From Haliotis cracherodii (lineage: Eukaryota): a DNA stretch of 64,000 bases. The stretch lies in assembly GCF_022045235.1 (NCBI RefSeq), contig NW_027266273.1:25978001-26042000 (forward strand). Direction: 5' to 3'. A model generated the notes under the pieces. That model was not told the origin of the DNA and made no database searches. It was given only the letters and a program-made list of their open reading frames with translations. This document shows positions 3,392-63,813 of this stretch, in pieces. Both the position numbers and the translations under genes were made by a program. The first letter of the stretch is position 1, and every line of letters begins with the position of its first letter.

Positions 3392-6300
3392 AGAAATTTG
3401 CAGGCGATGTAGCGCTGGTCGTCATGTCGCTCCCTGTATGGAATAACGAACACAGGGGTAGATTTAAACATACTTCTGTTACATTCATGTATGAGTAAAT
3501 TTGAATGAGGCAGGTTAAGACCCAAGAAGGCTGATGACAACTTTTATCAAACACAGGAATAAACATAAACATATTATTTTCCCTGCATGTGTGTGTATTC
3601 AAATGAGGCAAAGAAGGAGTCAATTAGGCTGATGACAACTATTGTCAACCATGTGCCTGTCTTGTAATCTACTTCCATTCAGGTACTACGATATGTATAT
3701 AGAACTACATCCATCACGGCATACGTATGGTTACTCTAGAGACATGCCCGACGCAGCATTAATTAGCAAAAATCAGTCGACTATATACATGGGCCAAAGG
3801 CAACATTAATTATCACTAGCCTGTTCCCGATCGTTCCTGACAATACAACTACTTCGGGAAAAACATTAAATTGTATGCAATAGTCTTACAAACGGTGCAC
3901 ACTCATTGACCGGTGTAATTGGTGCACAGAAAGTCGACAAAATAAAGCATTTCACAGCAAGCAGTTCACGTGTTACGAAAGGGACATAACTCTTCCGGTC
4001 AATGGGGCTCTGCCAGGTTTGGGTCTGAATCGGTCAAATTTGATGAAATAACACGACCAATGCCTATTCTGTGAAGTGGCTTTTGAAAAATAACATTTTT
4101 CATCTTTCCATTTGTTTCATTTGCATTCCTTATTGACGGAATACTCACCTTTCAGAAATGAGATAATATTTGCTCCTGGATTTTAAGATAGGTTGATTGT
4201 CTTAAGGCGGTTTGATTAATCATCACTTAAACCTCTTTATATATTTTTTTGTTAAAAACTATTTAATGTGTGTCGGGAATGAACAGACGGTTTATCGTCA
4301 ACGAAAGTCCACCTAAAACACAAACATGACCAAAGCGTGGGCGAATATTGTTTCAGTTTCAATTATGTCGGAAATTTGCGTCATCTGTTCCGTGTTTGAA
4401 ATCGTTGACTCACCATACGATTTTTAAAAATTATCTCTTGAATTTTGCAATATGAAAATCTACTTTATGTTGAATTGACAACAACGTATAACAAGTAGTC
4501 CGGTTCATTATTGCATTAATTGAAACATAGTTAACCCCACCAGCGTAATAACAATAACTTAAAAGACGCCATGTACCCGTTAACGATAGATTATGTGTTT
4601 GTGTATTTTTTCGTGGTAAAACAGTAGTAAAACGCCGCTTTCAGCAATATTCCAGCAACATCACTGCGGTCGACACCAGGCATGGGCTTCGCATATTGCA
4701 CCCATGTGGGTAATCGAAACAGGGTCTTCGGCGTGACGAGAGAACGCCTCAACCACTAGGCTATCCCACCGCCCCAGAAGTTTCAGAAACACTTACCATT
4801 GACGACCGTGCTCTGGAAGCATATGTAGTGATGCAGCTCGTCACAGGAGGATGTGTTTATACGGGCAGCGCCTGTCGTGTTGGGGTACAGGACCCTGCAG
4901 CTGCCTGCAGATGTATTTTGTTCTTCAATGGTGTAAAGGGAGCATTGCAGTATAGTTAAAGTACTTTCAGTTTCTAACACTTGATTGTGACGGACATTTA
5001 TTCACTCGATAACATTAGTTACTGAGAGGTGCTTATTTATCATAGGACCCATGAAGATTCGGGGTAGAATTAATCTTCAGCAACCCATGCTTATCGTAAG
5101 AGGCGACTAACGGGATCGGGTGGTCAGGCTCGCTGACTTGGTGGATGCATGTCATCGTGTCCCAGTTGCATGGATGGATCGGTGCTCATGAATCAGATAT
5201 TATCTGTGTTATCTGGTCCAGACTCGATTATCGACAGACCGCCGTAACAGGCAGGAATATTGCTGACTGCGGTATTAAACAACAAACAAATACTGGAGTA
5301 GAATATTTAGCAAAGTGTTGCCAGTATTTAACTCAAAAGTACTCACTTTATCTCTCTTTAGTATCTAATCCAAGGCAACACGTGTATTTCCAGACACAAA
5401 AAAAACACCAACAACAAAAAACAAAAACCACAAAAACAAACAAACAAACAAAACAAACAAACACACACAAAACACACACACACAAACACATAAGGTCCCC
5501 TCTTTACCTTGGATTTTGGTGTCATTGTAGCCAAGCCATACTGCCTTGCCCAACCTATTCGTTCTATTCAAGAAGGCTGTTTGAAGTGATGACATTTTCA
5601 GGTTTGTAAGGTTTACCATACTGCCGTTCCTTGTCAGACAATCTCGCTCTGCCACTGACATATTCGCCTTGGTCGAAGACAGATCGAAGCTGGACGGTGG
5701 GATTTCTATAGATATGTAAAACGCAATCATAAGAAAGGGGTTTAATGTCACTTCCATATGATCACAACTAAATGACTTAATGATATTGATGAGTAATTAT
5801 GGCCACCTTGGTTCAAGTGAATCACTGCATATATCTGTTCCTAGCATTTATTTTTCCCTGAATAAGTTTAACTTTTTGGAATCACTATTTGGTGGAGACT
5901 CATAGACACACGCTTGGGAAGAAGTAAGCTTCTGTCAATGGGTTCTGCTTTGTTGTGGAAAGGGTTTTGCCATCTTTATTTAAACATACACTGATCCTAC
6001 ATGGCAAGCGTTCAATAAATATCTAATCTGTCTTCAAAGCAAACTCCCGATTCCTGGATTATTAAGGTGTGGTCATTCAAACCTAATTATGGAAATATGA
6101 AATAACATTAGTTTAAATGCATGACATGGCTTGTTTCATGTTTTTCAGGAAATTGTACGATACTGTTATTTTCGAACCAGGACAAGGATTATGAACACGT
6201 GACAAGTTTACAAACTGGAGGAACAACGTCACGTGTTTACCACGTGGAGGCGCTCAAACGAATAACATCTTCTAGCATAGTCCTTCACAGAATGACTGTC

Positions 6301-8661
6301 CTAGATCTACGTATTTAACACAGTGAAACCCCGTTCATACAAATTGTAACGTCCTCGGGTAAAACGTCCAGATTAACACATTCCCGAGTTAACGAAACAC
6401 TGGCATGTAGTCGTGACGGGCCCTTCCGTTTTCCCTGTCACTGATATCGATACAAGGTCCAATGTCAGGAGAAACTCATAGCCTCCCGTGAAGCATGACA
6501 CTATTTTGTATATACAAGGCTAATGATGCTATCCGTCGTGGTTTATGAGTATAGTTAGAGACATAATGTAACCTCGAAAATGTGGACGATATAGTTTACA
6601 GATCGTCTGGATTAACCATGTTCAAGATTAACGAATACTGGAACCTAGTCATGTGACATTAATTTGTGTACAGGTCCTCAACAGCTTTCGGGCAGAAAGC
6701 AGGATAACCCGACTAACGGGATTCCCTGTACATTCAAAGTGAGTGAGTGAGTTGGGTTTAACGCCGCTTTTAACATTATTCCAGTTATATCACAGCGTGT
6801 CAGCTTGTCACGAGCACGGGTGTGGTGCTGGCAAACCTAGAAACATAATAGGGGTGAACCGGGATTTGAACCCACAATCGTAGGTTTCTGGCGTGTCCAG
6901 GGGACGCAACTCTGCACAGTGAATCGCGGCGCCTTAGACGACTGGGCCACCCGTGGCCTTCCCCCCCCCCCCCCCCCCCCCCCGTCATTGACTGAAACTG
7001 AAGCTGTTAGCAGTAGCTTTTACACTTAAGACACTGATTTTTTCTGTCCACAAACTGAACAAGATGGAAGAATGATGTTGGATGATAAATAAAATCTGTC
7101 TTTTGATATCAAATATATCAACATTCGTTGATAAAATCCTCGGAGTGTTTCCACTTTTATCAACGATTGTTGATATATTTCAAATCAAAAGACACGAGGA
7201 TGAGATTCTCTATATACATGTACATGTCGGTGTCGCTTGTGTCAGTTTGAAATGTGGCTTCTCACTTCAACCGATCAACCGCCATCAATTTCAACTCATT
7301 TGAACGGGGAAAATGTATCTCTTTCCTGGTATTATGTATTCTACATATACAGTAAACTACGGTTATAACGAACTCAAAGGGACCACTAATTTTAGTTCGT
7401 TATAACCGGAGTTCGGTATGAGCTACATACAACATATGTATACATCAAACGGATGGGACCTCTCTAAAACGGTTTGTTTTATCCGTCAGTTCGTTATAAG
7501 TGTGTTCGTTACGAACGTAGTTTACTGTACTACTCGAAAGTGGCTCCCGATTCTTTCATATTACGGGGCGTTCGGGTAGCTTAGTGGTTAAAGCGTTCGC
7601 TCGTCACGCCGAAGACCCGGGTTCGATTCCCGACATGGGTACAATGTGTGAAGCCGATTTCTGGTGTCTCCCGCCGTGATATTGCTGGAATATTGCTAAA
7701 TGCGACGTAAAACCATACCCACTCACTTTCATATTACTATAGTTAATCTATCATGGCATGGTAGATTAACTATAACAATATGAAAGAATCAGGTGCCACT
7801 TAACTTCAAGGCATGAACGATTAACTAAAGGACAGACAGACAGACATTCTTCATTTCCACCAATAATGGAGGAGTACATATGAATGTAAATTAACCCCTA
7901 AATGTCCTGTAATAAACCAAAGCAGATAACAAAAATTACATGCAATGCCTTTCTAAGTAGGTGATAGTGAACAGTAACGGTTATAAGATGTTTTGTTTGA
8001 TGTGTAGCCTGCAAATATGTACAAACTTTGAGACAACCAACACAAATTGTATCCAAGTGCTAAAATCAACACGACACAAAGTGTTGTGAGAGAATAGGGT
8101 TGTCCTTCACTTCTTTTGAGTAGTATACATGTATGTATTTGATAAACGATGTGCAAATGTTGGTGTTAGTTAGATGACAGCATTGTGAGGCACTAACCTC
8201 TGTCGGTTAGGAGAAGCTCAGTTTAACCTGTTTGTGAAATCACATGATCATCAAATGCTGCACTCAAAATCCTATTCCAGGCTAACGGGGGTTAAGTTAG
8301 GTTACAGCCGTTTTGAATAATATTTCAGTCATATCACGCAGTCTCATAAGGAGGCAAGCGCGAAGTGATACAGATCTTAAACGTTTACTTCTTTGATGAA
8401 ACAGGGCAACGTAAGTTTTGCTGAATCGCATTGTACATTGAAACAAAACAACATGCTACAATCAACAACAAAATATTACGAACACATGCATTTCTGTACT
8501 ATGCGCATGATTATAACCCTTTATAACATCTGTAGTTTTCCCAATATTAACGATTCCAAAATGCGAACTGGCCATTTGTACTTACCCGTCTTTGTCATCA
8601 TCACCATGGCAACCCAGAGGATAAGAACACACACAAACAGTGCGATACTCACAGAAGCCAT
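3392..8661 (-). CDS. Gene A: C-type lectin-like domain receptor, 5' part (3' exons lie beyond the left edge)
   Basis: Exons with GT-AG sites, all phase 1: 8661-8586 (signal peptide MASVSIALFVCVLILWVAMVMMTKT); 5705-5508 (..NMSVAERDCLTRNGSMVNL..KAVWLGY..); 4904-4797 (GSCRVLY..SSCDELHHYICFQ); 3433-3392 (S/T-rich GSDMTTSATSPANF). CTLD hallmarks: A-x-x-x-C, WLG, C..C..YIC. Same MASV start and two-exon CTLD as genes D. Confidence 0.8.
4630..4776 (-). mobile_element. tRNA-derived SINE family 1 copy
   Basis: Reverse complement of the GGGGCGGTCGGGTAGCCTAGTGGTTAAAGCG...GGTTCGATTCCC...AAGCGGCG element seen at 7565 and elsewhere. Confidence 0.85.
5046..5291 (+). mobile_element. SINE-like family 3 copy (CCCATGCTTGTCGTAAGAGGCGACTAACGGG core, AAAC tail)
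   Basis: Dispersed repeat with ~11 copies in the window; ends GCGGTATTAAACAACAAACAAA. Confidence 0.85.
6740..6960 (-). mobile_element. tRNA-derived SINE family 2 copy
   Basis: Head GCACGGGTGGCCCAGTCGTCTAAGGCG...GGTTCAAATCC on the minus strand; (ACTC)n tail; matches the copies at 18800, 39110 and 47412. Confidence 0.8.
7350..7527. mobile_element. Tc1/mariner (pogo/Tigger-type) MITE
   Basis: TA|CAGTAAACTACG...CGTAGTTTACTG|TA terminal inverted repeats with TA target duplication; second copy at 11663-11835. Confidence 0.9.
7565..7727 (+). mobile_element. tRNA-derived SINE family 1 copy
   Basis: Pol III A box (TAGCTTAGTGG), B box (GGTTCGATTCC) and ACTC tail. Confidence 0.9.
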
Positions 8662-9395: not shown

Positions 9396-9404
9396 GGTTC
9401 GGCA

Positions 9405-11945: not shown

Positions 11946-11948
11946 CGC

Positions 11949-12000
<52 letters not shown>

Positions 12001-12211: not shown

Positions 12212-15200
12212 TTACACGGCAACTGCATCCGTTGTTTCTTCTTCCTCAACATCGGAGTGTTCTGGAGAGACGTCAGGCGCGTGTTCGCACACACAGCCCC
12301 CAGGGATCAGCAGGGAGTGGGGGGCAGACGAGGGGTAGGAGGAGTGCATGCTGCTAGCTGCGTGGACGCCGGTTGTAGCACCCATGCTGCTGCTACGGCG
12401 ATAGTTCCTAATGTTGGCGAGAGGTGGCGCCACGCTGCTTCTTGACTCATACTGAGTAGACATGCTGAAGTTCCATCTTGACAGTGATGTTTCCTCTGTT
12501 CTCGGCTCCTTGTAGGCCACCCGTCTCAGGGCACTGCTGGTCAGATGCGTGATTCTGTTACAGAAACAATGCGACATGAAGCATTTTTCATTTACCGTGT
12601 TTCTCATTGACATGAAAAATCCATGTATAGTCACGAAAGAAGGCATACAGTCGACCAATACTGCATGGCGAATTAACGATCTTACTGCATTTCTTAAAGG
12701 TAATACATGTGTCCCCAACATTTAACTCTCCCGTGTTTTGTTGTGAGCATTTTTTCAAATCTTTCTGGTGTCCCCCGCCATGATGTTACTGAAATATTGC
12801 TAAAAGCGTCGTAAAACCATACATACTCACTCATTCAAAACTTCCACGAACAGAAAGATTAGTAGCCCAACTGATAATGAATCATTTGTGGATACAAACG
12901 TTTGTGACGACCGCACATTTATGAATGTGCGCAAATAAATCTAACGACTTATTTTATTGACTGTTCTAGAGAGTGCATGCAAACCCCAACCGCACCTTCT
13001 GACAGTGCAGATTGCGACGACACATATCACTCCTGACACAACTCCGCAGATTCCAACTCCAAGAATGACAAGACCTTCGTGTGGGAAATAAAATATAACA
13101 GGTTAAACACGTACTTTAATTTGTTCTACCTGTGCTTCATTGTTGACCTCATGTCCTTGTCTGGTAGAAAAACGTTCTTTAACTAATAGTATAGTTCCAA
13201 CTGTTCAATGACTAGTATCACGTTTCGTATTATTCTTTCAAATCAAAAGTAAAACCACCTGTGTATAGCAAATTTGTTTCAAATAATCATAATTAACGTT
13301 GTTCTACCAACTCTATTTAATAATGTGTACATCACTGGTTATAAGTCACTGACGATGGAGGAATTTTAGCTTCCGACACGTTGATCTATTACATACACAG
13401 CAAATAGTCTTTACAGGTCCGTTTTTCTTTAGCTCACTTATCATAATGTGCACATGAGGGACTTCACAGGGGTCTTTTTCCCATTAACCTATGCTTGTCG
13501 TGTACAGGGATCTAGTTGCCGGAGGTGACGTCATAGTCACGTGACCTGTGCATCCAAGATAGCTGCACTTCCGGTCCCGTGAGCGCGTGTGCGCCTCTAA
13601 GATGGCGGCACTTCCGGTTCCGAGAGACGTGCGCCTCCAAGATGGCGACACTTCCGGTTCCGGGAAGGTGTGCGCCTCCAAGAAGGCGGCTCGGCGCATC
13701 CAAGATGGCGGCGGCGGGGAAGGAGGGAAGGCGGGAAGGCGGGAAGGAGGAAGGCGGGAAGATGGGAAGGAGGAAGGCGGGAAGATGGGAAGGAGGAAGG
13801 CGGGAGGAGGGAGGGATGAGGAGGAGAAGGAGGAGGGAGGGAGGAGGAAGGAGGAGGGTTCTTTGTTTTGGTTTGGTGGTGGTGTTGGTGGAGGGTAGTC
13901 TTGAATGAAAGCCTTCTTTCGTGAGAGATGGTAGGCCCTGAAAAGGGCCGTTTGGAGGAAAATGATGCAAAAACGGGACCGGGAACCGGAAAACGGGAAA
14001 CGGGAACGGAAACAGGATACAGAAACGTCATCCTAGCTACTTTGGCTGTTGGACTCAGTAGTAGCTGCATGGCGGCCAACGACCAAAGTAGCTACAGTTG
14101 TATCATGGCGTCTTGTGGTGTTCTGGCTTTGGCATGAACTAGTTGTCAGCACGAGTCAATGATTCTATCCACTCCGATGGTGCACTAGTCAACCATTCGA
14201 CTCACTTATCCGTTGGTGACATCCCGCCCGCCTTCCCCGCCTTCCCACGTTCCCCACCTTCCCGCCGCCGCCATCTTGGAGGCGCACGCCCTCCCGGAAC
14301 TGGAAGTGTCGCTATCTTGGAGGTGCACTCCTCCCGGACCCGGAAATGACGCCATCTTTGAGGCGCACAGACCCTCCCCGGAACCGGAAGTGTCGCCATT
14401 TTGGATGCACAGGTCACGTGACTATGGTGTCACTTCCGGCAATCAGATCCCTGTACACAACTTGTCTTGTACGAGGAGAGTTTATGGATCGGGTCCCACG
14501 TTTGTTTGTTTGTTGTTTAACGCCGCACTCAGCAATTTTCCATCTACATGACGTCGGTCTGTAAATGATCGAGTCTTGACCAGACAATCCAATTATTGAC
14601 ATCATGAGCATCGATCCACGCAATTGGGATACGATGACATGCATCAACCAAGTCAGCCAGCCTGATCCTCCGATCTCGTTAGTCGCCTCTTACGACAGGC
14701 ATAGTCGGCTTTTACGACAAGCATGGGTTGCTGCAGACCTATTCTACCCCAGATCTTCACGGATCGGATCCTACGTCAACCGATGGGGTGGTTCGCTACT
14801 CATAATATCAATACCTTGATTATCCGGTCCAGGCTGGATTATGTAATAGCAGCCAACGCATAGCTGGCATATTGCCGAGTGCGGAGTAAACAACAAAGAA
14901 ACAACCATATCCCCCAAATACTTCACGCTAAAGACTTATGTAAACCCATAACTCGTATGACTAGCTATATTTAATTTCTCACCTGTTATCTGCTGTGTAT
15001 CAGCGAGTCCGGTTTGTTGAGTGTCTCCTTTTTTCTCTGTGTCAGGGAGATAGCTTGAGGAGAGTGTTATAACTATAACAATAAAACAAGTAAATAATTA
15101 AATTAGGCGTAAATTGTATACTAGTATCATGAGAATTAGTAAAAAATGCTACTTGTATGAATATATCAATTACCACACAACTATACACTTATGGACAATG

Positions 15201-18200
15201 AAAATGAAATGTAAAAAGTTACCTCCATCGCTTGTCTGCGTTGAATTGGTTGGCGAAGTCGTGTTTTCTGTGTAATCCCCGAGGACTGACGAACACAAAG
15301 ACGTGTTTCCTGGAAATAAGAAATGAAGCGAATTGACAAATAATTGATAAACTTTTCATTATGTATTTGTTATTAGCACTCAATGACATGGATGGTATCT
15401 CGTCAGTTTTTGATGGTGAAGGGACATCGTTATACTTGTCTATGATAATAACAAAGTTTCGTGTGACACGATGTTTTCATTTACATTTTGTAAAGCTTTT
15501 GCGCAACTGCCTTGTTAATCGACCTACCTTTTCTGTCCAGGAACACATCCACGGCCATCACAGTGTCACCCTTCACCATGCACGTAAAATGTCCATAGTC
15601 GTTATCGGATACGTTCCTAATCTTTAACTGCCAGGATCCGTTGTCATAAGAGCTCTTGTATCTATTTCTGAGGCTTGTCTTGCCAACAGATACATATCGT
15701 CCCCTCTTAGTCATCCATATCACCTGCAAACACATATCGTTACGTCACACACGTTCAAGATAGCTATTGTGGGATTAACACGAGTGATTGAGTATGGTTT
15801 TACGCCGCTTTTAGCAATATTCCAGCAATATCACGGCGGGGGACACCAGAAATGGGCATCACACATTGCACCCATGTGGAATCGAACCCGGGATTTCGAG
15901 CGAACGCTTCAACCACTAGGCTACCCCACCGCCCTTGGAATGACACGTCTAGTCACGTCTAAGTATTTGTCCATAGGTAATTAATTACCTTGGATGGCTT
16001 GCGAGCCTTGACGACACAATGTAGTTTGGCTGTTCCACCACAGGCAACTCGAACAGAAGTGCTACCTGATATGCTTTCATTGACTGAAGCTTCACCTGTA
16101 ACGAGCAGAGTATATGTGAACTGTGAAGAGGTCAACCTATTCATGATATACATGTAATACACAGACGGGTTTTCTAAGGATAACAACACACATATGGAAA
16201 CCTCAGGGTGTTGTCTGACACTCTTTTTGGAGTATGGCTTTGTTTCATCAGGGTAACGGCACATGCGCCCCGTATGTCACCGTGACAGAATGGTTCCCAG
16301 CCCCACATTGTTGGTCGAAAGAGACTAGTAATGATCCTTAGCCTCTCACAACGATAACCTGCTTGTGGGTTTCTCCAACCTAGCAAACCAATACCACTTG
16401 ATTAAACGATTCGTTCTAACAAATAGATGGATGCTTGATTGTAGTTTAACGCCACTCTCAGCAATATTCAAGCTACATGACGTCGGTCTGTAAATGATCG
16501 AGTCTGGATAAGACAATCCAGTCTTTGACATCATGACCATCGATCCACGCAACTGGGATGCGATGACATCTTAGACAAAAACAAAATCAACAAGAAATTG
16601 TAGCCACCTCTTTGCGTTAATTCAAACCGCTGTACGATCTTTCTACCGGCGCACTTGTATATGCAGGCATAGACCCCTGCATCCGAACGACGTGGAGATT
16701 TGATTGTCAGTTGGTTCCATTGTAAAGCATATTTCTTAGGATTCACAAATAGCCTCTTGCCGATAGATATTGGGACAGGGTTGCACCATCTTTTCCACGC
16801 TATCTTCATTGTCAGGAAAGATATAAAGTTTACATTAATGTTTTCAAATCAAAATCAATCAAAAGGCAAACAAGATATGCATAAGAGTACATAAACCCAA
16901 GTGCAAAAAGTTAAATTCAGGTGTGTATAAACTTCATAAATAGACATCGTCTCTGGTCTGTCGCTCATGTGCCGTTGCTACAATGACGTATGGAAACATG
17001 ATGTTCAAACGTATATATACATAAATCATACATAAATTCTCATACATAAATTCTTTTCATGAAGATTGTGTGAATGGCCATTGTCAACGGTAGGGCAGGA
17101 ATACCTACCCTTTTCGCGAACACCTGGTGTCATCACTGATTTTCAGTGGTCCATTCTTATGACTTTCACAGCTATTTTCCCTTTCAGGCAAAATGGAATG
17201 TTTCCGTGAATTATCAAGACTGGTTATTGTCTTGTATTGACGTTAAGTATTGACACGATACCCGTTGACGAGAGACTGAACACATGACCTCGAAGATGAC
17301 CTCGAAGATGAACACGGTAAGCGCATGAACAACAACTTGAACAACAACAAGACTTTCCTCTACAATCACACTCCCGAGAAACCCATGGGAATTCCCTTGC
17401 ATGAATACATTCACAACTGCTTCTTATGTACAATAACATACAGGGTCCGTACACTGCGGCCTTTGGAGTCTCCAGTTATTCATCACTAAAACGTCCAATT
17501 TGTATTCTTCATTAAATGACCTTTATTTCAGCGGCTATTCAACATATCTTTAATTCTAATCTTAAATGACCCCTTTAGCAATTATATCTAACTTTTAAAC
17601 ACCACAAGTTCAATGCAACACATTGAATAGCTTCCTTTATTGTTAACCGTGTCGTCCATTTTGACATCCTGTGGTCATGACGGACTTGCACAGTGACTAA
17701 CTGTGTCAAGAAGATGTTGACGAAAAATGCTACTTTAACAGTGATATTATCTAAATATTTTTTTGCAATGTAACTAAAAACAACTTCAGGATGTTACTAT
17801 AGAAGAGTTTGATCATACATGCGCTCTAGCTGTCATCTGTTTTTTTATAAACTATTTTTCGCGCAATACAACTGGTCGTTATCTGTCACATGTACACCTC
17901 GCAGGACGTTCATAAATCTCAATCTTATGAATGTTTGCTGCAAGTTCCGTCAGTACGTAATAACAAATATCGACACAGATGACTGTTAATAGTTAAACAG
18001 GTCACAGTTTGAAAATGAGTAAAATGTGCTACTTGTATGAAGAAAATTGTTGGTAAAATATCTTCGGCTAGCAATACATACCGTCTTGCACCAGGTGACG
18101 TTGCATGTCAAGGTGACGTCTTTTCCTCTGTCGTATGTGATTTGAGTTGTTGATTCTGCAACGTGTTTATTGTGACATATTATTTACCATCCCAAACTGG

Positions 18201-48563: not shown

Positions 48564-48834
48564 TTAATCATTCTGTTCCGACTGGTTTGCTGGTGCCCTT
48601 TCGTTGTTTTCAGGTTCATTAAGTGCAGCATAATTGTTCATTTCTGAAGCATCTCGAGCGTGTAGGTGAGAGTAATAATCCACCTCCGGTCGTCCTTCAC
48701 TTGCGACATTCACCTGATTTCCTGATGACCCTATTTTCCTCCTGAAAATATAGTCAGTCCATCAATGGTCAAATGGATTTTCAATTGATGACGACAGACT
48801 AGATAGCGCGTGCGTTTATGTGTTATTGTGTGAG

Positions 48835-48866
<32 letters not shown>

Positions 48867-54797: not shown

Positions 54798-57700
54798 CCT
54801 TCATACGCGACGCTGTGTAAATACTGACACTCCACACTCACGTGTATCGTACAGATATTGTGACTCAGTTTCCTGCTTCGTTGCTAATACCAGTTCATGA
54901 CTGGCTATGACAATAAACATTCCAGCTGATAGGGCAGGCTAGCTTAGAACAAGTGAAGAAAGGTCCCTTAGCTTAGAAAAGTCCCTTATCTATGAGGAAA
55001 CAACATGTTCTCTTGTATTTGATAGCAAGCATATAATTTATTCGAGGTAAATGTTGCAGTGTCAACTGTATACACTTTCATAGTATTATTGTTATACTAA
55101 ACACATCATTAATATGTCAATATTTATGGTTGGATGATGTGTGCATACATTTGTCCGAAAACATAAACGGATAATGCATTAATGCAATATTATACAACGC
55201 AGCTTAACATTCCGCACCAGTCACCTCAGAGTGAAGTTGTTTACTTTTATCGCTATTTTGTGTTTACGCCCAATGGCAAGCCATTCTGTTCTGCCTGTCG
55301 AGAATAGTTATTCTCTGGCGTTGATTATTTCCTATATATACATGAATGTGTATATGTCATGATAAAACAGACTGGATCACGTCGAGGTTTGCTCTTTAAA
55401 TAAATGAAATGAGAAAAAAATCAAAATAATACATGCTAATGTTCACCATGTATTGGTTCTCAAACATGCCCTGACGCCCTCCTGTTTTGTCGGTTTGTTG
55501 GTAACTTGTCATCCATATGTGTCCCTATTAAGTTGCGATCTTTCCCAACTTAGTAACGTGGATTCATAACTGATTTCATTACAGATCGAGAGATATTTTT
55601 AAACCAAAATATCCCCTGCTTAGTGAACAATACTGACTAAGGTATGCAGAAGGGTGACAAGAGTTACCTCCCCCTGGATCAGTAATCGGTGTGTTTATTA
55701 TTACCATACAAGTTGTGTCATATTTCACTGGCTAAACTTCACGATTAAATGTTAGTCGATCGTCGTTGAAAATACAGAAATGATAATGTCTTCTGGTTAA
55801 TGTGTAACTCGAAGAGAATGCTAAGGCTCATATCCCACTCGCCATTTCACGGAAGTATCGTATTGTACCGAGGCACCCGTATACCGGCTTGACTGACCTG
55901 GTTCAGGGACAGTTCACTGAAAACGTGAGTGTGTATTGACGCATGAGCATCACCCCAGCTCTATAACACCGTTAGATGACATGTCACATCGTATGATCGC
56001 CACTTATTCCAACACAAATAGTTCAGTTCCCTCAATCAGCTTATAATTAGTGAAGGTCTTGATCAATTACCAATGTGAAGCCTAACTGACATAGACTATG
56101 GGTGGTTTTAGTCAATTAAATTCGAGGTCTAGTTGATAGTACATAAGTCCATAAGGTCGGTTGTTCGATGCCCTGGCTGAGTCCTACCGGGGGAGTTAAA
56201 AGTAGTTGTTATGGTAGCCTGGCGCTCTGCTTTGAGGTAGAAAACAAGGACTGGTCGACTCGTAATCTGTCGTGGTTGGGCATTCATGATATACTGCAGC
56301 ATACCATCTCAGTGCAACCACAGACCAATCACCACCGACAGACAGCTGTCTAATCCGTATCAAATCAAATTAATACACATTGCATTACTACATACGGAGA
56401 ACGGAAGTTGTGCCACAGTATGTTTCAATATTTTACCTCTCTAACAAGAACATAAGGCTGAGGTGGATGAGTTACTTCCCTTAGGCGTGTAAGGATCGTA
56501 TGGTGGGATATCCATACCCATAAAAACGCGACATAAGATGGTGGGAGTGGACGTGTTTGTGAATCGCTCTCACTGGAAGTGTTTCCTGGTCGAGATTTCA
56601 ACCGTACACTGAGCATTGCAAAACATCGACAAGAGAAATACAATCTGTCACAAAATGAGTGACAAAAAGATAAGAAAAGGACTTCGTCAAAATGACTCTT
56701 GTGATTCGAATATAGGGACATTCCTAAGAGTGCCACGTCGATACACAAAGGGAAGCTTAGTGCGTGAGTCTTTATATACTTTGTTCACACCTAACCCCCT
56801 GTACCAGAATATGACGTATACTGTTGAAGGACGATACAAACAATACATTCGTCTGCAGGCACAGCAACTTAAACAGGATGCAACAGCATAGATAAGGGTA
56901 GAAAAGGACGAAAGTGACATCAAAGTCAACATTGCATATCTGGAACTGAAAGTCAATGCAATAGATGAAAGATCGCTTTACTGCACTTAAAGCCAATGCT
57001 ATCTATATCAGTGATAGTCCTGACGAGTGGGAAAATGACCAGAAAACAATAGAAGCGGACGTACAATCCCTCAAACAACAAATGGGTGAATTGAAAAGCA
57101 TTGACGAAGAAGATTTGGAACTGAGAGAGTCACTTATCGACCAAATAGCTCGCTCTATGAGAGACACAGTGTTACAAACATCAAAGAGCTAAGTGGAGTC
57201 GACGCGGATGGTGGAACTTGGGAAGAAACTGAAAATGTGCTCAGAAGGTCATTCAGGATGAACTTGAATTTGAAAGTGATAAAAGGCACTTTAAACGTAA
57301 ATCGGGAAGAAAAACCAACCACCCCGTCGGGGTGAAGATCCGCGACCCCGCCCTGGCATCGCCACGTTTATGTTCACCCGTTAGAGGGACGCTGTCACAT
57401 GTTGTGGGAAAGAGTTAAAAGGGAAACCATTCCATATTGTAGAACAGTTCCTAGAAGAGATAGTCGCCTGCAGGAGAGACGTCCTGATGCGTCCTGAAGG
57501 TCGGAAAGGCTAGGCGTTGGGGGGAAATGTCAACTCGGTTGTTGACAAACTTTTCATAAATAATGCTCTTCAAACAGCTGATATACCGCCCCCTCTCAGA
57601 CCGACAACCAAAACGAGGCCATCAAAGGAAAGTACGGGTGGACAAGCGCGGGAACAGCATGGTGTCGTAACACGAGATATCTGATTTAGTTAACATGGTC

Positions 57701-60700
57701 AGTGAGATACAACTACAAGTTTGAGCTACCGACAATAAACCGGATGTGTTTGAATGTGCGGGTATTGTAATTGACGCTGTCGGAAGCCCACGTGTTTGTG
57801 TTTGGTCAGACCGTGCAAGCATAAGCAGACACAGTGTCCGAAATACAAATGCCTGCCCGTGGCCGGTAACTTTTCTGTCGGGCTGCCGGAAATTTTCGTC
57901 CTCCTGCCCGACTACCTGGCAGATACTTTTAAGACTTACGTATTCAGTTTTATCATAACTCCCTGTTGACTCCCAAGTAATTGTTTGCATTATTTCAACT
58001 GAATCAAGATGCGATTTGCCCGGTAAAAAAAACCGAAATTTTTCACTAGTTATAATATCTGAATGTGCGCAAGTAACTTTGAAGATGGGCAGGCCACATA
58101 CCTGGGTCACCTGCCTGACTGTGGTACTGGATTTTAATATTTTTTCAAACACTGAGCAGACAACGGAGAGTAGAAGAGTTGTGTATGCTGGATATAATAA
58201 TGATATTCAGATGACTGCTCAGCAAATTGGAGAGGATATTTTAAGTACTAAGATTTATACATTCTGAACTTATCTTCAGTAGTTTGTGAGGGATTAACAA
58301 CTGACCACAGAGATATGAACACGTGTCACGTTGATATTAGGACTAAGTTATTATAATCATGCATCCCTGAAATGAGTGTGTGTGATATGTTATCTCAATT
58401 TGATAAAATACGTTTTGCAAGACTGAGTTTTCCGATGCTAATAAGATCCATCTACTTATGAAAATTCATGTGAAACATCAACTCATGATAACCCACTGTG
58501 CATGCTTAGTTTAGATGTTGGTGGTCTTAGAAGGCGCTCACAGTATCCTGATTTGCCAGACCATATATGGGTAGTGTGGTCAGGTCAAAAGTTAGTTTTG
58601 CTAGTAAATAATTATTGTGCGATATTGATCTTACTTACTCACCCCTGTTGTTACCGAGCTGGACGTGTGGCTAGGGGATTATACTATATACCCCCTTTTC
58701 TAGTAATTCGTGAATTACCAATCTCACCGGGATTGCATTGTTTTAGGTCAAACACCTTTCTATAGTTGTGAGTCAAGTTACTCTTTAGGTGAAGTACGTG
58801 TTGAATGTTGTGAGTCTAGATACTCTGTAGGTCCAGTTCCTGTATATTCAAGAAGTCCAGGATGTCCTTGCTCAGCCCAAACGACTTTAGACTGAGATTT
58901 TAATCAAGCATGTTCGTCTGATCTTAATTTTCCAAGAGGCATATTTTAGGGACAGGCTCTCCGTTACCATTTCACCCTTCCTTACCAAGACGAGATTACT
59001 CACTCCTTACTTAACGAGTAGGAGTAGCTGACTCTACCTACAGTGTGTAGCAGCTCATTAAGTAGTAGGTGAAGCCAGGCAGTTACACTGGTCACACCTA
59101 ACTGATCTGTGTGATTATTGGGTCGTCTGACAAATGGGATGTCTGACAAGTGAACCGATATTTGAGTTAATTTACTCCCAGGTGTAAATTGGATACAGCC
59201 GGTTTAATTGGCCTTCTATGCGGCTTTCTGGTCAGAGTGTTTGGTAATAGCTGTTACACAGTTGCTCAGCTAATCAGCTTGTATAGTTGCTCATGACTTA
59301 GATTAATTAGTGATCTTGGTCAGTGTCATTTGGGTCTTGAGCCTTTAGGTTTCACTACCTGTTTTCGTGTACACATTTTGAAACTGATCGTCAGCGCTAT
59401 CCTAAAAAGTACTATTATGTCAACCCTAAATATCATAAACTTCAAAAACTGTTTCTGCTCCTAAAGTCTCAGTGTTAAGAAACCTCGGCGGATTTGTCTC
59501 CTGTGTAGTTAAATGGTGTATAATATCATACGCATACTCATGCGAGTGTCCTCTGTTAATCAGATGACTTTCTTGCATTTACGTCCTTGTACCACTGTAA
59601 GTGGTTAGTTATGGAATAAACTATGTCGATGTCGATGTCGATGTCAATGCCTATGTCTCTCTTTAGATGGTCCAGTCGTCAAAAGTGCCGCAATTTGCTG
59701 TGCAGAGTCGCGCCCCGTGGGAACGCCAGAAACTTATGATTGTGGTTTCGAATCCCGTTTCGCCCCGATTATGCTTTTAGGTTTGTCAACACCATACCCG
59801 TGCTCGTGGGTTTCACCGAAGTGGTAAAGGCCTGAGACCTGCATCACTTCGGGCTTTCCTCCCACATTAAGGTGCGATATAACTGGAATACTGTTAAAAG
59901 CGGCGTTAAACTCAGCTCACTCACTCACTCTTTAGATACCTTTAGCTGATAAGAATAAGACATTTACCACGTTCTCTATTATTGCTTTATTCTTATAGTG
60001 ACACCCTGGTCTCAGGAGCACAGCTAAGTGACAATAATTTAGTGAGTAGAAACCCCAGGCCCATTGTTCACAATATTCTATGTTTGTATAGATGTATTAT
60101 GAATTAACATGTCGAATACCCACACAAACAGGGTTAAACAAAGCTAACGAATTGATTGCGAGAACAACAGTCACGTGTATTTGATAACCTAAACTCAGTC
60201 ACAGTATTTGAATTAACGTCATTCGGAGCACAGTTTCGTTCCTTCGAACTGGCGAAAGAAAAACATTTCCCTGTATGACAACATGTTCTAATTAAATAAC
60301 CTTTGAATCTCCACAGATATCGAACAAAGTTGAACATTAAACTGAAACAGGAAAAAATGACTAACAGTTTGGCCGGAATACATGACTACTAAATTACATT
60401 TCGTTTTATATTTTAGATAACTCAACAATCAAATATTCATTTATTTTGTGTTAATGTTACTTTCATCACTTGTGGAATTTACATGTTCTCATATATAGTC
60501 CTCAGTCATAGATACTGAGGACTGAGAAATAATTACAAAACAAATCACAACTACTTTAAACTTAATATTTTATTGAATAGCGTTCAGAGCAAGATATTAA
60601 AGAAAAAAAAAGGATATGTAAACCTATAGAAACGTATCATGCATGTGTGTACCGGTGGAAAAGAATGAACGCGGCTAGATCAAAGATTATCCGAAGAACA

Positions 60701-60817
60701 GTAGACACGAACTGTGCAGATCCTGCAATTGCATCCTGAGCTTGTGTGGGTATTGGCGATGGTCTCTGCAGAATTCATACCTTACAGTTCTGATTAGCAG
60801 TTTTAGGATTAGTGTAA

Positions 60818-61088
60818 TTAATCATTCTGTTCCGACTGGTTTGCTGGTGCCCTTTCGTTGTTTTCAGGTTCATTAAGTGCAGCATAATTGTTCATTTCTG
60901 AAGCATCTCGAGCGTGTAGGTGAGAGTAATAATCCACCTCCGGTCGTCCTTCACTTGCGACATTCACCTGATTTCCTGATGACCCTATTTTCCTCCTGAA
61001 AATATAGTCAGTCCATCAATGGTCAAATGGATTTTCAATTGATGACGACAGACTAGATAGCGCGTGCGTTTATGTGTTATTGTGTGAG

Positions 61089-61120
<32 letters not shown>

Positions 61121-63813
61121 TGCATGCGTGCGTGCGTGCGTGTGTGTGTGTAAATCGAATCTGGACCCGACAATCCAATGATTGATATTATGAGCAAAGG
61201 TCGGGGGACGATGAACAACTTTCAACAAACTCACCGAGCCTGACCAACCCAATCAATTAAGTCGCCTTTTTCAACAGCCACAGGTTGCTGGGTAACCGAT
61301 CCTAACCTGGAATCCCCCACAGCGTGCTGGGTTAGCTGACTAATATTGTTCATTGGAGTGTGTCTAAGAGCAGGATATTTCTACCAGTCATCACTGACTT
61401 TCATATTAGTGTAATCACTAGTTTGCCCTTTACTCTTAATGGAAACTGTTTCGGTTGATAGTCTGGACTGATCATTCTCTGGCGTTGGCATTTTGAATTA
61501 AACTTTATATTGAATTCGTCTGACAGCGATCTTGCCACAATTGTAACACCCACTTACTAGGAAGAACAACTTGCACGAATCATCATCTTGTAAACAATAC
61601 TAGTTACTGTTCCTACCTTTGGATTAAGTTACAGCCAAGAACAATGCTCACAGCAGCAAGAGCCGCTATCGTACATACGATCGAGGCGATGATTGGAACT
61701 GTGAGCAAAAATGAATATATATATCATTAAAGATAGCATGCATCGATTACATCTCGACGGAAAATATGTTGGTTTTTTTCAGGATCTGATTGGTATGGCA
61801 GTAGTTCTGTAAGTCCTCCCAATACAATGAAACTCTTCATTGGAGGCTTTCAAATGTTCGATTTACCCTAATCAAGAATGGGAGTTAAGTCTGACGTAAG
61901 GCAAATTAAAATGCTGTGAAAACTGTTTTCAATCTACGAGTCCAAAATAAAATCTTTTCAACAGCATACATCATACATATTGTGCATTCACTCAACATAT
62001 TCACATAATAAGCGCGGAATACATACGATGTCAAACGTGCAAATGTAAACACGTAGATTTATGTTTGTTACACCGAGTTGGTCATGCGTGGCATATGTGG
62101 TGAGCAACATACCATTTTAACATCCAAATCAATGCATAACTAAATCATGATAATACACACAATGACCAATCATACACCTTTACAGTCATAAATAATACCG
62201 TTTGTGTTTGCTCCAGGGCCTTTGGTTAGACTCGGTGGTGTAGATCCTGTGTGTATTACAACGTACAAGTACATATATACTAATATGCTGCCATATGCCC
62301 GTCCTGTCACATGTGCGTTTAATTATATTGGCAAAAATAGGGTCTTGACCGTCATGAATAGGTTGCAGTACAAGGAGACGCAATGGCTGTGGGTATCAAC
62401 GTCTGTAATCTCTACCCATGTATCTATGACGTTTCGATGCTACTTCTTACCCCTTCTTCGGGTGGTATATATGTACTTGACCAGCAGAAAGTAGGTAATT
62501 TGTTATCCATGTTTGAGATTGATAAATTACTGATATATTCTTTCGCGACTTACGTTATTGAAAATTGTTTCACGAAAATTGAGGCGTAAATGTTCGTACG
62601 TCTGTTAATGTATATTTATCAAGACGGAACAAATTATCGCCTATTAATTTTCGTTACTGCCTATCAATGTAGATGTCACCACGGAGAGTGAGTCACTGAG
62701 TGGGATGGGTTTAACGCCGCTTTGAACAATATTCCAGCTGCATCAGGGCGACTCAGCTTCACGTGGGAGATAAGCACAAGTGACGCAGGTTTCAAAAGTT
62801 TACCACTTTGGTGTAACCCACGAGCACGGGGATGGTGCTGACAAACCTAAAAGGTAATCGTGGCGAACCGGAATTCGAACCCACAATCATTTGCGTCTGG
62901 CGTGCTCACGGGACGCAACAGCGAATTACGGCGTCTCAGACAAATGGGCCTACAGTGGTCCCGTTACGTAGAGGACAACACACAGGTCGATATTCTTGAG
63001 TGAGTATGGTTTTACGCCGCTTTTAGCAATATTCCAGCTACATTACGGTGGGGGACACCAGAAATGGGCTTCACACGTTGTGCCCATGTCGAGAATCGAA
63101 CCCGGGTCTTCGAAGAGACGAGCGAACGCTTTAACCACGAGGTTACTCGACCGCCCCTAGGTCGATATTAACAACTGTATACGTGATTGTAGGACTATTC
63201 CCTTGAAGGTTATATGTTCAAGTGAGATTATGACTATATGTCAGTGAATAAATTTGCTGCTCAATATTTACCATTTTATAAGTAAGTAATTTAAGTACTA
63301 AGTAAATAATGTTGTCAGTAATTCACACTACCTAAACTATGATTACACGATGATAAAGCGCACAATGTACCATTACACAGTTTTACAGTAATGTGGATTA
63401 CCTTTTGTGTTTGATCCCTGGGTTGTGGTTTGAATCTGTGGTGTTGATGTTGTAGATCCTGTGTGGATACAGATACAGATAGGTAGACGTAGACTTGTAC
63501 TTGTCAAGGATAAAATAGGTAAATGGTAATCCATGTTTACAAAAATATATTACTGATATATTCTTACATGCCTTGGAATAATTTTAGCATTTACCCGATT
63601 GAAATACTGTTTCGCGAACAGTGAGGCGTTAATGTGTATATAAATACAAAATACATATAGCTAAGTAATATTTGTTTCTGCCTATCAATGTACATTTTAC
63701 ATAAAAGACATAACACCGGATGGATATGGTGGAACTACAATTGTATACATGATATGTACCTTGCGTGGAAGCATCCGTGGTTTCATTTCGACAAGGTACG
63801 TACCAATCAGAAC
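60818..63813 (-). CDS. Gene D3: third CTLD receptor copy, 3' part (ITAM-like tail; 5' exons beyond the right edge)
   Basis: Exons 63813-63760 (SDWYVPCRNETT.., intact), 63458-63402, 62246-62199, 61698-61617 (TM) and 60995-60818 (tail as in D2). Confidence 0.82.

What the first reader, a model, noticed from the sequence alone, without database searches (positions are those of the whole stretch)
3392..63813. Candidate invertebrate paired-receptor complex: CTLD and Ig receptors built from one phase-compatible exon kit
Seen: every gene-like unit modelled here encodes (A, by homology) a single-pass receptor (A, B, C, E, F, D1-D3). The complete models share one grammar: a phase-1 signal exon, recognition-domain exons, short symmetric phase-1 S/T-rich stalk exons, a 79-88 nt TM exon entering in phase 1 and leaving in phase 2 inside an Arg codon, then one terminal tail exon. 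Any ectodomain can therefore join any TM/tail in frame. Established: the vertebrate NKC (CTLD) and LRC (Ig) clusters and the Hydractinia Alr complex are tandem, fast-evolving receptor clusters with tyrosine-motif tails. Inference: this is an analogous molluscan locus mixing both folds. The CTLDs show no EPN/QPD or WND Ca2+/sugar motifs, which points to protein ligands.
Basis: partly seen in the sequence, partly recalled or inferred. Interest (0 to 1): 0.9.

Follow-up and report, generated by a model that had tools for sequence, protein, structure and literature searches.

The report
Abalone lectin-like receptor gene cluster
This stretch of black-abalone DNA is one end of a real tandem cluster of abalone-only membrane-receptor genes with a stripped-down lectin-like head, next to a pair of antibody-like receptor genes; their shared exon layout is the ordinary one for animal cell-surface proteins, and no immune or "paired receptor" role has been shown.

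Summary
The window is Haliotis cracherodii, contig C10:25,978,001-26,042,000. D1 rebuilt from the window equals RefSeq XP_071103263.1 residue for residue. B, C and D2 give open frames through canonical AG/GT exons with the stated phases.

The D head fails Pfam. Two template-free AlphaFold models nevertheless match only C-type lectin-like domains (50 of 50 top hits, Z 8-10). It is a compact form with the sugar/Ca2+ loop deleted.

The D family occurs only in abalones. It forms a same-strand array of at least 12 head exons, running from A to about 167 kb past the window start. D2 and D3 are 99% identical copies of a 12,254-bp unit.

Three points fall short.
- The exon "grammar" is the generic metazoan rule: class 1-1 modules, a phase-1 intron after the signal peptide, and a split Arg codon.
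- Transmembrane and tail exons of the Ig and lectin-like genes share no sequence. E and F have no head or signal exon.
- B and C have only three genomic copies and no YxxL/I/V motif. No tail has an ITIM and no transmembrane segment has a charged residue. The ITAM-like motif in D2/D3 is not conserved in H. rubra.

No RNA data could be obtained. This scan has already reported several similar abalone-only receptor clusters elsewhere in this genome.

The parts
3392..8661 (-). Unit A: distant member of the compact-CTLD family, incomplete in the window. Signal exon 8661-8586, head exon a 5705-5508, head exon b 4904-4797, S/T stalk exon 3433-3392.
   Evidence: The signal exon has a phase-1 donor CGG|GTAAGT. 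The translations and splice sites were checked. The family HMM hits exon a at E 1e-3 and exon b at E 0.6. Pfam Lectin_C hits exon b at E 0.03. A lacks the family's invariant Cys63 and Trp68. An 82-nt phase 1->2 TM exon lies 2.8 kb outside the window, followed by a roughly 120-aa tail ORF. No database protein of 79-250 aa was found; the expected product of about 290 aa was out of reach of that search.
12212..18629 (-). Gene B: type I receptor with two Ig domains, 8 coding exons, 382 aa. Exons: 18629-18563, 18155-18082, 16803-16608, 16095-15989, 15723-15528, 15309-15223, 13074-12996 (TM, 79 nt), 12554-12212 (tail).
   Evidence: The frame is open and every junction is AG/GT. Pfam I-set/Ig_3/V-set matches on half-domain exons reach E 5e-4 to 0.03. 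All PDB sequence hits of exon 15723-15529 are IgSF proteins, the best being DIP-alpha at E 4e-5. It is a paralogue of C, with 30% and 42% aa identity in the Ig b-exons. The tail has no YxxL/I/V motif and no Pfam match.
20587..28062 (+). Gene C: head-to-head paralogue of B, 8 coding exons, 455 aa. Exons: 20587-20662, 21853-21953, 22232-22448, 22887-22990, 24122-24323, 24876-24956, 25706-25790 (TM, 85 nt), 27561-28062 (tail).
   Evidence: The frame is open and every junction is AG/GT. Pfam V-set/ig matches reach E 3e-4 to 6e-4 on the b-exons. All PDB hits are IgSF proteins, such as Fc-gamma-RIII, VEGFR2 and pIgR. A search with the tail found no protein of 91-290 aa. A 43-bp minisatellite at 26027-27148 lies in the intron between the TM and tail exons.
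30146..31311 (-). Unit F: TM-like exon 31311-31224 (88 nt, phase 1->2, AG|GTAGGA) and tail-like ORF 30413-30146.
   Evidence: The phases and splice sites fit the grammar. No signal or ectodomain exon was found upstream. The tail is unique in the genome and has no Pfam match. Its status as a gene is unverified.
32210..33210 (-). Unit E: TM-like exon 33210-33126 (85 nt, phase 1->2, AG|GTATAC) and tail-like ORF 32600-32210.
   Evidence: Searches give the exons. No signal or ectodomain exon was found between 33.2 and 37.9 kb. The tail is unique in the genome and has no Pfam match. Its status as a gene is unverified.
37968..42525 (-). Gene D1: type I compact-CTLD receptor with the long tyrosine-rich tail, 8 coding exons, 329 aa. 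Exons: 42525-42417 (signal), 41456-41403 (S/T), 40763-40590 (head a), 40359-40270 (head b), 39826-39773 and 38934-38878 (stalk), 38590-38509 (TM, 82 nt), 38337-37968 (tail).
   Evidence: The translation is identical to RefSeq XP_071103263.1 (P0017). Isoform X2 (P0016) skips exon 39826-39773. The AlphaFold model has pLDDT 80-90 over residues 55-148. Foldseek's best matches are NKR-P1, CD69, NKG2D and DC-SIGN at E 2e-4. With VIA, 50 of 50 top hits are CTLDs, at Z 8.1-10.2 and rmsd about 2 A over 81-88 residues. The tail tyrosines (EYDIL, VYSHL, NYDTT, IYDRI) are conserved in four Haliotis species.
48564..54797 (-). Gene D2: tandem copy with a short tail, 6 exons, 229 aa. Exons: 54797-54689, 52221-52048, 51814-51725, 51204-51148, 49444-49363 (TM), 48741-48564 (tail with YSHL-x10-YAAL).
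   Evidence: The frame is open and the junctions are AG/GT. The acceptor and first 24 nt of the first stalk exon were lost at the duplication junction near 51535. No protein of this type from H. cracherodii was among the database hits. The tail is 49% identical to H. rubra XP_046546981.1.
60818..63813 (-). Gene D3, 3' part inside the window: stalk exons 63813-63760 and 63458-63402, TM 61698-61617, tail 60995-60818. Head and signal exons lie beyond the window end.
   Evidence: The TM and tail exons are identical to those of D2. Head exons a and b lie at window-relative 64753-64580 and 64346-64257. Three signal-exon copies lie at 66.2, 68.4 and 70.5 kb.
39503..64000 (.). Tandem duplication with a period of 12,254 bp that produced D1, D2 and D3.
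   Evidence: Self-BLAST shows 41887-51535 matching 54159-63789 at 99.3% over 9.6 kb, and 40079-41574 matching 51534-53030 at 96.3%. The intergenic part carries a dispersed repeat of about 300 bp and no Pfam-recognisable ORF.

Best explanation
The window covers the proximal end of an abalone-specific tandem cluster of type I membrane-receptor genes.

What each gene encodes. A signal peptide comes first, then mucin-like S/T-rich segments. These are followed by one compact C-type lectin-like domain of about 90 residues, one transmembrane helix and a cytoplasmic tail. The domain keeps helices alpha1 and alpha2, strands beta1-beta5 and the C1-C4 and C2-C3 cysteine pairs. The long loop that carries the Ca2+ and sugar site is deleted.

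How the cluster is laid out. It runs on one strand from unit A, across D1-D3, to at least 167-183 kb past the window start. It grew by recent unequal crossing-over of a 12.25-kb unit.

What else is in the window. Inside the cluster sits an unrelated head-to-head pair of two-Ig type I membrane-protein genes (B and C). There are also two orphan TM-plus-ORF cassettes (E and F) of doubtful status.

Inferred mechanism. The compact CTLD binds a protein or another non-canonical ligand. Its helix-alpha2 face, encoded by exon a, is the part that differs between copies. Binding would cluster the receptor, and the conserved YxxL/I tyrosines of the tail would then be phosphorylated and recruit SH2 proteins. 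D2 and D3 carry a shortened, diverged version of the same tail.

What is shown and what is inferred. The shared exon-phase layout is real, but it is the general layout of metazoan secreted and type I proteins. The gene structures, the fold assignment, the cluster extent and the restriction to Haliotis are shown. Ligand type, tyrosine signalling and any immune role are inferred.
For: - D1 from the window equals RefSeq XP_071103263.1.
- B, C and D2 have open frames with all-canonical splice sites.
- In 1.84 billion representative proteins, the family was found only in Haliotis rufescens, cracherodii, asinina and rubra.
- Two independent template-free AlphaFold models, from P0017 and P0004, gave only CTLDs among the top 50 structural matches, at Z 7.9-10.4.
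- Weak sequence echoes point the same way: Pfam Lectin_C N-terminal half at E 0.016-0.05 and NKR-P1B at E 0.015 with the family profile.
- The family HMM finds 12 head exons, all on the minus strand, from 5.4 kb to 167 kb. There are 16 phase 1->2 TM exons between -3 and +183 kb and none in the 97 kb upstream.
- The duplication is 96-99% identical.
- Exon a of D1 and D2 differs by 9% (dN 0.095, dS 0.118), against 1% in the upstream intron.
- The tail tyrosine motifs are conserved across four species.
- The Ig assignment of B and C rests on all-IgSF PDB hits and sub-threshold Pfam Ig families on the half-domain exons.
- Patthy 2021 (PMC8001218) establishes that the exon-phase rule is general.
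Against: - No RNA evidence could be obtained. For B, C, D2, D3, A, E and F, transcription and splicing remain predictions.
- Pfam does not recognise the head at its threshold. In each AlphaFold run only one of the five models was confident.
- No canonical ITIM, ITSM or charged TM residue is present.
- The ITAM-like motif of D2/D3 is not conserved in H. rubra, which has YFSHL.
- D2 has lost one stalk exon, and no protein of the D2/D3 type from this species was in the database.
- dN/dS in exon a is about 0.8, with both rates raised. That fits gene conversion or a mosaic origin as well as selection.
- Nothing ties the cluster to immunity.
Confidence: 0.65

Rival explanations
1. The locus is an integrated paired-receptor complex in which CTLD and Ig ectodomains are combined with interchangeable TM and tail cassettes from one shared, locus-specific exon kit. 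It would be analogous to a fused NKC plus LRC.
For: All units share the same phases, so any head could join any TM/tail cassette in frame. Both folds are adjacent. E and F look like free TM/tail cassettes. RefSeq models of H. rubra LOC124257045 join the signal and head exon a of one unit to either of two downstream exon sets with different tails.
Against: The phase pattern is generic for metazoan extracellular proteins. TM and tail exons of the Ig and CTLD genes share no sequence. The D1 tail is confined to the D cluster, and the E and F tails are unique in the genome. The Ig family has only 3 genomic copies and tails without YxxL/I/V motifs. No tail has an ITIM and no TM has a charged residue.
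Confidence: 0.1
2. The receptors are real but not immune. The D family and B/C would serve cell adhesion, gamete or larval-settlement recognition, or epithelial sensing. B and C would be JAM/CAR-like two-Ig adhesion molecules, and D would be a CD44/LYVE-1-like mucin-stalked adhesion receptor.
For: The D architecture (compact CTLD, S/T stalk with skippable symmetric exons, TM, tail) parallels CD44 and LYVE-1. This parallel comes from my own knowledge and was not tested. B ends in ...AVAV, a hydrophobic C-terminus of the kind PDZ domains bind. B and C are low-copy. No immune signalling motif is canonical.
Against: Recent tandem expansion, restriction to one lineage and a head exon that varies between copies are more typical of recognition families under conflict. 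No Link-module structure appeared among the top 50 structural matches.
Confidence: 0.3
3. Part of what is modelled is not functional. E and F are chance or decayed TM-plus-ORF remnants. D2 and D3 are young duplicates on their way to becoming pseudogenes, or a duplication inflated by assembly.
For: E and F lack signal and head exons and have no relatives. D2 lost the acceptor of a stalk exon at the duplication junction. No D2/D3-type protein of this species was in the database. The 99.3% identity over 9.6 kb leaves room for an assembly effect.
Against: The D2 and D3 frames are intact across six exons with good splice sites. A short-tail form is also modelled in H. rubra. The lost exon is symmetric and is skipped anyway in RefSeq isoform X2 of D1. 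The E tail ORF of 163 codons is long for chance.
Confidence: 0.3

Closest known systems
NKC-encoded C-type lectin-like receptors (NKR-P1, CD69, NKG2D, Ly49, CLEC family)
   Same: They share the CTLD fold without Ca2+/sugar motifs and were the best Foldseek matches. Their genes lie in tandem clusters and have tail variants (Kelley et al. 2005, PMC1193534).
   Different: NKC receptors are type II proteins, with the tail at the N-terminus, and they keep the long-loop region. They signal through an ITIM or through a charged TM residue plus an adaptor. The abalone proteins are type I, lack the long loop, and have neither an ITIM nor a charged TM residue. There is no detectable sequence homology, and Pfam falls below threshold.
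Compact CTLDs: Link modules of CD44, LYVE-1 and TSG-6, and bacterial intimin/invasin
   Same: They lack the long-loop region, which is the definition given in PMC9630629. CD44 and LYVE-1 are also type I proteins with an N-terminal domain, an S/T-rich stalk, a TM helix and a tail. That architectural point is from my own knowledge.
   Different: No Link or intimin structure was among the top 50 structural matches. Canonical CTLDs fit best, so this looks like an independent loop deletion. Link modules are described as vertebrate-only. Hyaluronan-binding residues were not examined.
Type I single-CTLD receptors (CD302, layilin)
   Same: They have a signal peptide, one CTLD, one TM helix and a short tail with tyrosine motifs (my own knowledge).
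   Different: Those have canonical-length CTLDs, are conserved single-copy genes, and are not in tandem arrays.
LRC (KIR/LILR) and the Hydractinia Alr complex
   Same: Like B and C, they are type I Ig-domain receptors encoded by phase-1 exons. Alr genes form a cluster with ITAM/ITIM-like tails (Huene et al. 2022, PMC9546547).
   Different: B and C are only a pair, with one further copy on another chromosome. Their tails carry no YxxL/I/V motif. No variability data exist.
Other abalone-only receptor clusters reported by this scan (s1-823179 CTLD-WSC-CTLD; s1-834033 and s1-826175 Ig receptors)
   Same: They are in the same genome and follow the same theme: tandem, lineage-restricted type I receptors with tyrosine-rich tails and no demonstrated function.
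   Different: They have different ectodomains and different tails. The D1 tail is found only in this C10 cluster.

Membership tests
[quoted passage not shown] | The CTLD fold: beta1, alpha1, alpha2, beta2-beta5 | tested here: met
   Two AlphaFold models have domain pLDDT of 80-90. All top 50 VIA matches are CTLDs at Z 7.9-10.4 and rmsd about 2-2.6 A over 81-89 residues. The top Foldseek hits are all CTLDs.
[quoted passage not shown] | Four conserved cysteines (C1-C4 and C2-C3 pairs) and a WIGL-type core motif | tested here: met
   Cysteines 75, 115, 128 and 136 (P0017 numbering) are invariant or nearly so, and an 'IWI' motif sits at 107-109. The disulfide pairing itself is inferred from position.
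[quoted passage not shown] | Pfam PF00059 match above the gathering score | tested here: not met
   Full-length family members score at most 15 bits against a cut-off of 22.6, and only over the N-terminal half. Single exons reach E 0.016-0.03.
Canonical Ca2+-dependent C-type lectin (CRD) | Long-loop region with EPN/QPD and WND motifs | tested here: not met
   Only about 4 residues separate the WIGL-type motif from C2 ('IWINKNGTC'). Only about 85 of the 110-130 target residues align. The domain is a compact CTLD as defined in PMC9630629.
Paired activating/inhibitory receptor family (NKC/LRC type) | Closely related ectodomains joined to different TM and tail regions | tested here: met
   D1 compared with D2/D3: the signal exon is 99% identical in nucleotides, and the head exons are 91% and 99% identical. 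The TM exon aligns only over its first 50 nt, at 86%. The tails are 122 and 58 aa long. The short tail aligns to the middle of the long one.
Paired activating/inhibitory receptor family (NKC/LRC type) | An ITIM ([SIVL]xYxx[IVL]) in one partner, and a charged TM residue or an ITAM in the other | tested here: not met
   Neither the D1 tail nor any other tail in the window has an ITIM. No TM segment contains K, R, D or E internally. D2/D3 have YSHL-x10-YAAL, which is ITAM-like, but H. rubra has YFSHL at the first site.
Paired activating/inhibitory receptor family (NKC/LRC type) | Expression on immune cells and opposing signalling | not testable with these tools
Immunoglobulin superfamily (genes B and C) | Ig sequence signature: Cys in strand B, Trp in strand C, DxGxYxC in strand F | tested here: met
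   All four domains show it across their a and b exons. Every PDB sequence hit is an IgSF protein.
Immunoglobulin superfamily (genes B and C) | Pfam Ig family match above the gathering score | tested here: inconclusive
   Only half-domain exons could be searched, giving E 3e-4 to 0.03, below the cut-offs.
Locus-specific shared exon kit (exon shuffling between the Ig and CTLD genes) | Sequence relatedness of TM, stalk or tail exons across the two ectodomain types | tested here: not met
   tblastn of all exons against 304 kb gave no cross-hits between the B/C, D, E and F TM or tail exons. The D1 tail occurs only in this cluster.

The most novel reading that the evidence does not exclude
All internal exons of the same-strand tandem units are phase 1-1. 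Read-through transcription with splicing across units could therefore attach one recognition exon (signal plus head exon a) to alternative downstream sets of head b, stalk, TM and tail exons. The same binding surface would then carry either the long tyrosine-rich tail or the short ITAM-like tail. That would be a 'paired receptor' made by splicing across a gene array rather than by separate genes. E and F might be further optional cassettes downstream of D1. The only hint is the RefSeq isoform set of H. rubra LOC124257045. There, isoforms X2 and X7 share an identical signal and exon a but differ from exon b onward, and X6 starts from a second signal exon.
Probability: 0.15. Interest if true: 0.7.

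Novelty: new variant of a known kind. Interest (0 to 1): 0.4.

Why it matters
It adds a previously unrecognised, abalone-restricted receptor family. Databases list these proteins only as 'uncharacterized protein' with no domain. Their head is a CTLD that has lost its long loop, probably independently of vertebrate Link modules. This shows another way in which the CTLD scaffold is trimmed for non-sugar recognition.

The young 12-kb duplicates differ in their heads and carry different tails. They make a tractable case of receptor birth in a critically endangered species whose decline was driven by disease.

The report also shows that shared intron phases alone should not be read as evidence of a dedicated exon kit.

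Tried and rejected
- A search with the tail exon of C found nothing among proteins of 91-290 aa. A search with the ORF holding A's head exon found nothing among 79-250 aa. Both are uninformative, because the expected full-length products are longer than the search's length window.
- B and C could not be linked to RefSeq proteins for the same reason.
Exons were searched one by one, and joining was done only inside scripts to check the frame. D1 was searched through the identical database protein P0017.
- Pfam on single exons gave only sub-threshold hits. Pfam found nothing in any tail.
- ORFs in the intergenic part of the repeat unit (44-47 kb and 56-59 kb) have no Pfam match. The region carries a dispersed repeat of about 300 bp, so these ORFs were rejected as genes.
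- Ectodomain exons for E and F were sought with splice-aware scans, the D-family HMM and Ig HMMs. None were found.
- The idea that the D1 tail is shared with other abalone receptor clusters was tested and rejected.
- Positive selection on exon a was considered. dN/dS is about 0.8 with dS also raised, and the middle of D1's exon a resembles the copy at +85 kb. A mosaic or gene-conversion origin is at least as likely.

Full report
**Origin of the window.** The window is G000:C10:25,978,001-26,042,000 of a 1.18-Gb genome. The species is the black abalone, Haliotis cracherodii. The RefSeq proteins XP_071103263.1 (P0017) and XP_071103265.1 (P0016) map to the window at 100% identity. Their contig length of 29,332,880 bp equals that of C10. 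The window has no N runs.

**Overall layout.** Self-comparison shows a tandem duplication with a period of 12,254 bp. Positions 41887-51535 match 54159-63789 at 99.3%, and 40079-41574 match 51534-53030 at 96.3%. There are three minisatellites, at 1-2056, 2142-3188 and 26027-27148. Several short interspersed repeats are also present.

**D genes: finding the family.** Head exon a of D1 (57 aa) was scored against 1.84 billion representative proteins. It found only seven proteins. Five are RefSeq 'uncharacterized proteins' of H. rufescens, H. asinina and H. rubra, and their clusters also hold H. cracherodii members. One is a short fragment from an unnamed Logan assembly, and one was not identified. 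A follow-up search with the 309-aa H. asinina protein again found only Haliotis entries, with no precomputed Pfam domain.

**D1.** Aligning these proteins to the window gave the exons. With splice sites added, the 8-exon D1 model translates to exactly XP_071103263.1, 329 aa. Its exons are:
- signal, 109 nt, phase 0->1;
- S/T exon, 54 nt;
- head a, 174 nt;
- head b, 90 nt;
- stalk exons, 54 and 57 nt;
- TM, 82 nt, phase 1->2, with the split codon CG|C (Arg);
- tail, 370 nt.

All exons between the signal and TM exons are phase 1-1. RefSeq isoform X2 skips the 54-nt stalk exon.

**D2 and D3.** D2 gives an open 229-aa frame through six exons. The acceptor of its first stalk exon was deleted at the duplication junction. 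The TM and tail exons of D3 are identical to those of D2. Its head and signal exons lie just past the window end.

**D tails.** D1 has a 122-aa tail with EYDIL, VYSHL, NYDTT and IYDRI. All are conserved in four species. D2 and D3 have a 58-aa tail with YSHL-x10-YAAL. This short tail aligns to the middle of the long tail. In H. rubra it reads YFSHL...YATL, so the ITAM-like spacing is not conserved. No tail has a canonical ITIM, and no TM segment has a charged residue.

**Is the D head a CTLD?**
- Pfam says no at its threshold. Full-length proteins reach at most 15 bits against a cut-off of 22.6, over the N-terminal half only.
- An AlphaFold2 model of P0017, built with a 13-sequence family alignment, has pLDDT 80-90 over residues 55-148.
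- Foldseek against the PDB returned only C-type lectin-like domains. NKR-P1A/B, L-SIGN, NKG2D and CD69 came first, at E 2e-4.
- An aligner that does not depend on Foldseek returned CTLDs for all 50 top rows, at Z 8.1-10.2 and rmsd about 2 A over 81-88 residues.
- A second model, of the H. rubra short-tail protein P0004, gave the same picture at Z 7.9-10.4.
- A family profile against PDB sequences gave weak CTLD echoes, with NKR-P1B at E 0.015.

Only about 85 of the 110-130 target residues align. The sequence runs from the WIGL-type motif straight into C2 ('IWINKNGTC'). The long-loop region is therefore absent, which makes this a compact CTLD as defined in PMC9630629.

One caveat applies. In each AlphaFold run only one of the five models was confident.

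**Extent of the cluster.** I read 100 kb upstream and 140 kb downstream of the window.
- Family proteins and a family HMM find 12 head-a exons, at 5.4, 40.5, 52.0, 64.5, 77.8, 85.1, 95.2, 110.7, 122.0, 132.1, 146.6 and 167.3 kb relative to the window start. All are on the minus strand, and none lie in the 100 kb upstream of the window.
- A splice-aware scan finds 16 good TM exons of phase 1->2 between -3 and +183 kb. Fifteen are on the minus strand, and none lie in the 97 kb upstream.
- Genome-wide, exon a has ten matches: seven in this cluster and three on contig C5.
- The D1 tail occurs only on C10, between 26.016 and 26.348 Mb.

**Exon a divergence.** Between D1 and D2, exon a differs by 9% (dN 0.095, dS 0.118). 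The 400 bp upstream differ by 1% and the 220 bp downstream by 4%. The middle of D1's exon a resembles the copy at +85 kb. The pattern fits a conversion or mosaic tract at least as well as point-wise positive selection.

**Unit A.** Four exons are present in the window:
- signal exon, 8661-8586;
- head exon a, 5705-5508;
- head exon b, 4904-4797;
- S/T exon, 3433-3392.

All are in the right phases. The family HMM hits exon a at E 1e-3, so A is a distant relative. It lacks the family's invariant Cys63 and Trp68. Its 82-nt TM exon and a tail ORF of about 120 aa lie 2.8-5 kb outside the window.

**B and C.** The two genes lie head to head, with start codons 1.96 kb apart. Each gives an open frame through eight AG/GT exons, of 382 and 455 aa. 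The exon order is:
- signal (0->1);
- Ig1a (1->0) and Ig1b (0->1);
- Ig2a (1->0) and Ig2b (0->1);
- S/T stalk (1->1);
- TM, 79 or 85 nt (1->2, AG|N Arg);
- tail.

The half-domain exons reach Pfam V-set, I-set and ig at E 3e-4 to 0.03. Every one of the 60-plus PDB sequence hits is an IgSF protein. B and C are 30% and 42% identical in the b-exons, while their introns are unalignable. That argues for coding constraint.

The genome holds only one further relative, on contig C1, with at least two Ig domains split in the same way. The B and C tails are unrelated to each other. They carry no YxxL/I/V motif and no Pfam domain. I could not reach their RefSeq proteins, because the length window of the word-index search excludes them.

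**E and F.** Both have a TM-like exon and a tail-like ORF with the right phases. No signal or head exon was found by splice scans, the CTLD HMM or the Ig HMMs. The tails have no relative in the genome. They may be optional 3' cassettes, novel small genes, or remnants.

**The 'grammar'.** The description is accurate, but it is not special to this locus. Patthy (2021, PMC8001218) summarises three points.
- All domain types used in metazoan exon shuffling are class 1-1.
- Phase-1 introns are in strong excess at signal-peptide cleavage sites. PMC1626468 reports the same.
- An AG|G proto-splice site in phase 2 splits an AGG Arg codon.

Arg and Lys directly after a TM helix are expected from the positive-inside rule (my own knowledge). 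Exchange between the two folds would leave related TM or tail exons, and none were found. The only hint of combinatorial use comes from RefSeq models of H. rubra LOC124257045. Isoforms X2 and X7 share the signal exon and exon a but differ from exon b onward and end in different tails. Isoform X6 starts at a second signal exon. These are predictions and may be chaining artefacts.

**Context.** This scan has already followed up several other abalone-only receptor clusters in the same genome: CTLD-WSC-CTLD, two Ig families and F-lectin/EGF. All have tyrosine-rich tails and no shown function. This locus is one more of that kind, notable for its compact CTLD. A recent black-abalone selection study does not mention lectin or Ig genes in its main text (PMC13229213).

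**Limits.**
- Spliced models other than D1, which exists as a database protein, were searched exon by exon only. The joined step was left out.
- Function, ligand and tissue remain inference.

**Verdict.** The 'paired immune receptor complex built from one exon kit' reading is only partly supported. Interest is moderate.

Noticed in passing
window 26027-27148: A 43-bp minisatellite of about 25 copies lies in the intron between the TM and tail exons of C. Its unit repeats the TM exon's donor context (GGACAG|GTAATA).
   Followed up: partly
window 1-2056 and 2142-3188: Two G-rich minisatellites, with 25-bp and 22-bp units and strong GC skew, fill the intron between A's last in-window exon and its TM exon outside the window.
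   Followed up: partly
window 51506-51535 (D2) compared with 39773-39826 (D1): The duplication junction removed the acceptor and the first 24 nt of D2's first stalk exon. The same exon is skipped in RefSeq isoform X2 of D1.
   Followed up: yes
L003, window-relative 66226-66336, 68361-68471 and 70494-70604: Three copies of the D signal exon, 92-95% aa identity to D1's, lie in a row upstream of D3.
   Followed up: no
window 40590-40763 compared with window-relative 85164-85337: The middle of D1's head exon a (LKDLITSIG) matches the copy at +85 kb and not its 96-99% identical neighbours D2 and D3 (LEDVKTSRG). This suggests a conversion tract.
   Followed up: partly
window 48399-48468 and 60653-60722: A further TM-like exon of 70 nt ending in CG|GT lies just downstream of the D2 and D3 tail exons.
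   Followed up: no
window 13487-14561: A GC-rich stretch with long ORFs on both strands and inverted low-complexity repeats lies in B's intron upstream of its TM exon.
   Followed up: no
window 45600-45900 and 57850-58150: A dispersed repeat of about 300 bp has more than 1000 candidate copies genome-wide. Other recurring repeat-derived ORF fragments ('GSLVVEAFARHAEDPGSIP', 'ATNGIGWSGSLTW') are scattered through the introns.
   Followed up: partly
window-relative 106758-123038 (L007-L009): The RefSeq gene for XP_071103270.1 (P0013, 367 aa) has two head domains in tandem. The second is longer and is closer to unit A's head.
   Followed up: partly
L025-L026 (C1:79,730,001-79,750,000): The only other relative of B and C in the genome has at least two, and possibly four, Ig domains split into a and b exons in the same way.
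   Followed up: partly
window 12212-12224: B ends in ...DAVAV. This hydrophobic C-terminus resembles PDZ-binding ends of junctional two-Ig adhesion molecules.
   Followed up: no
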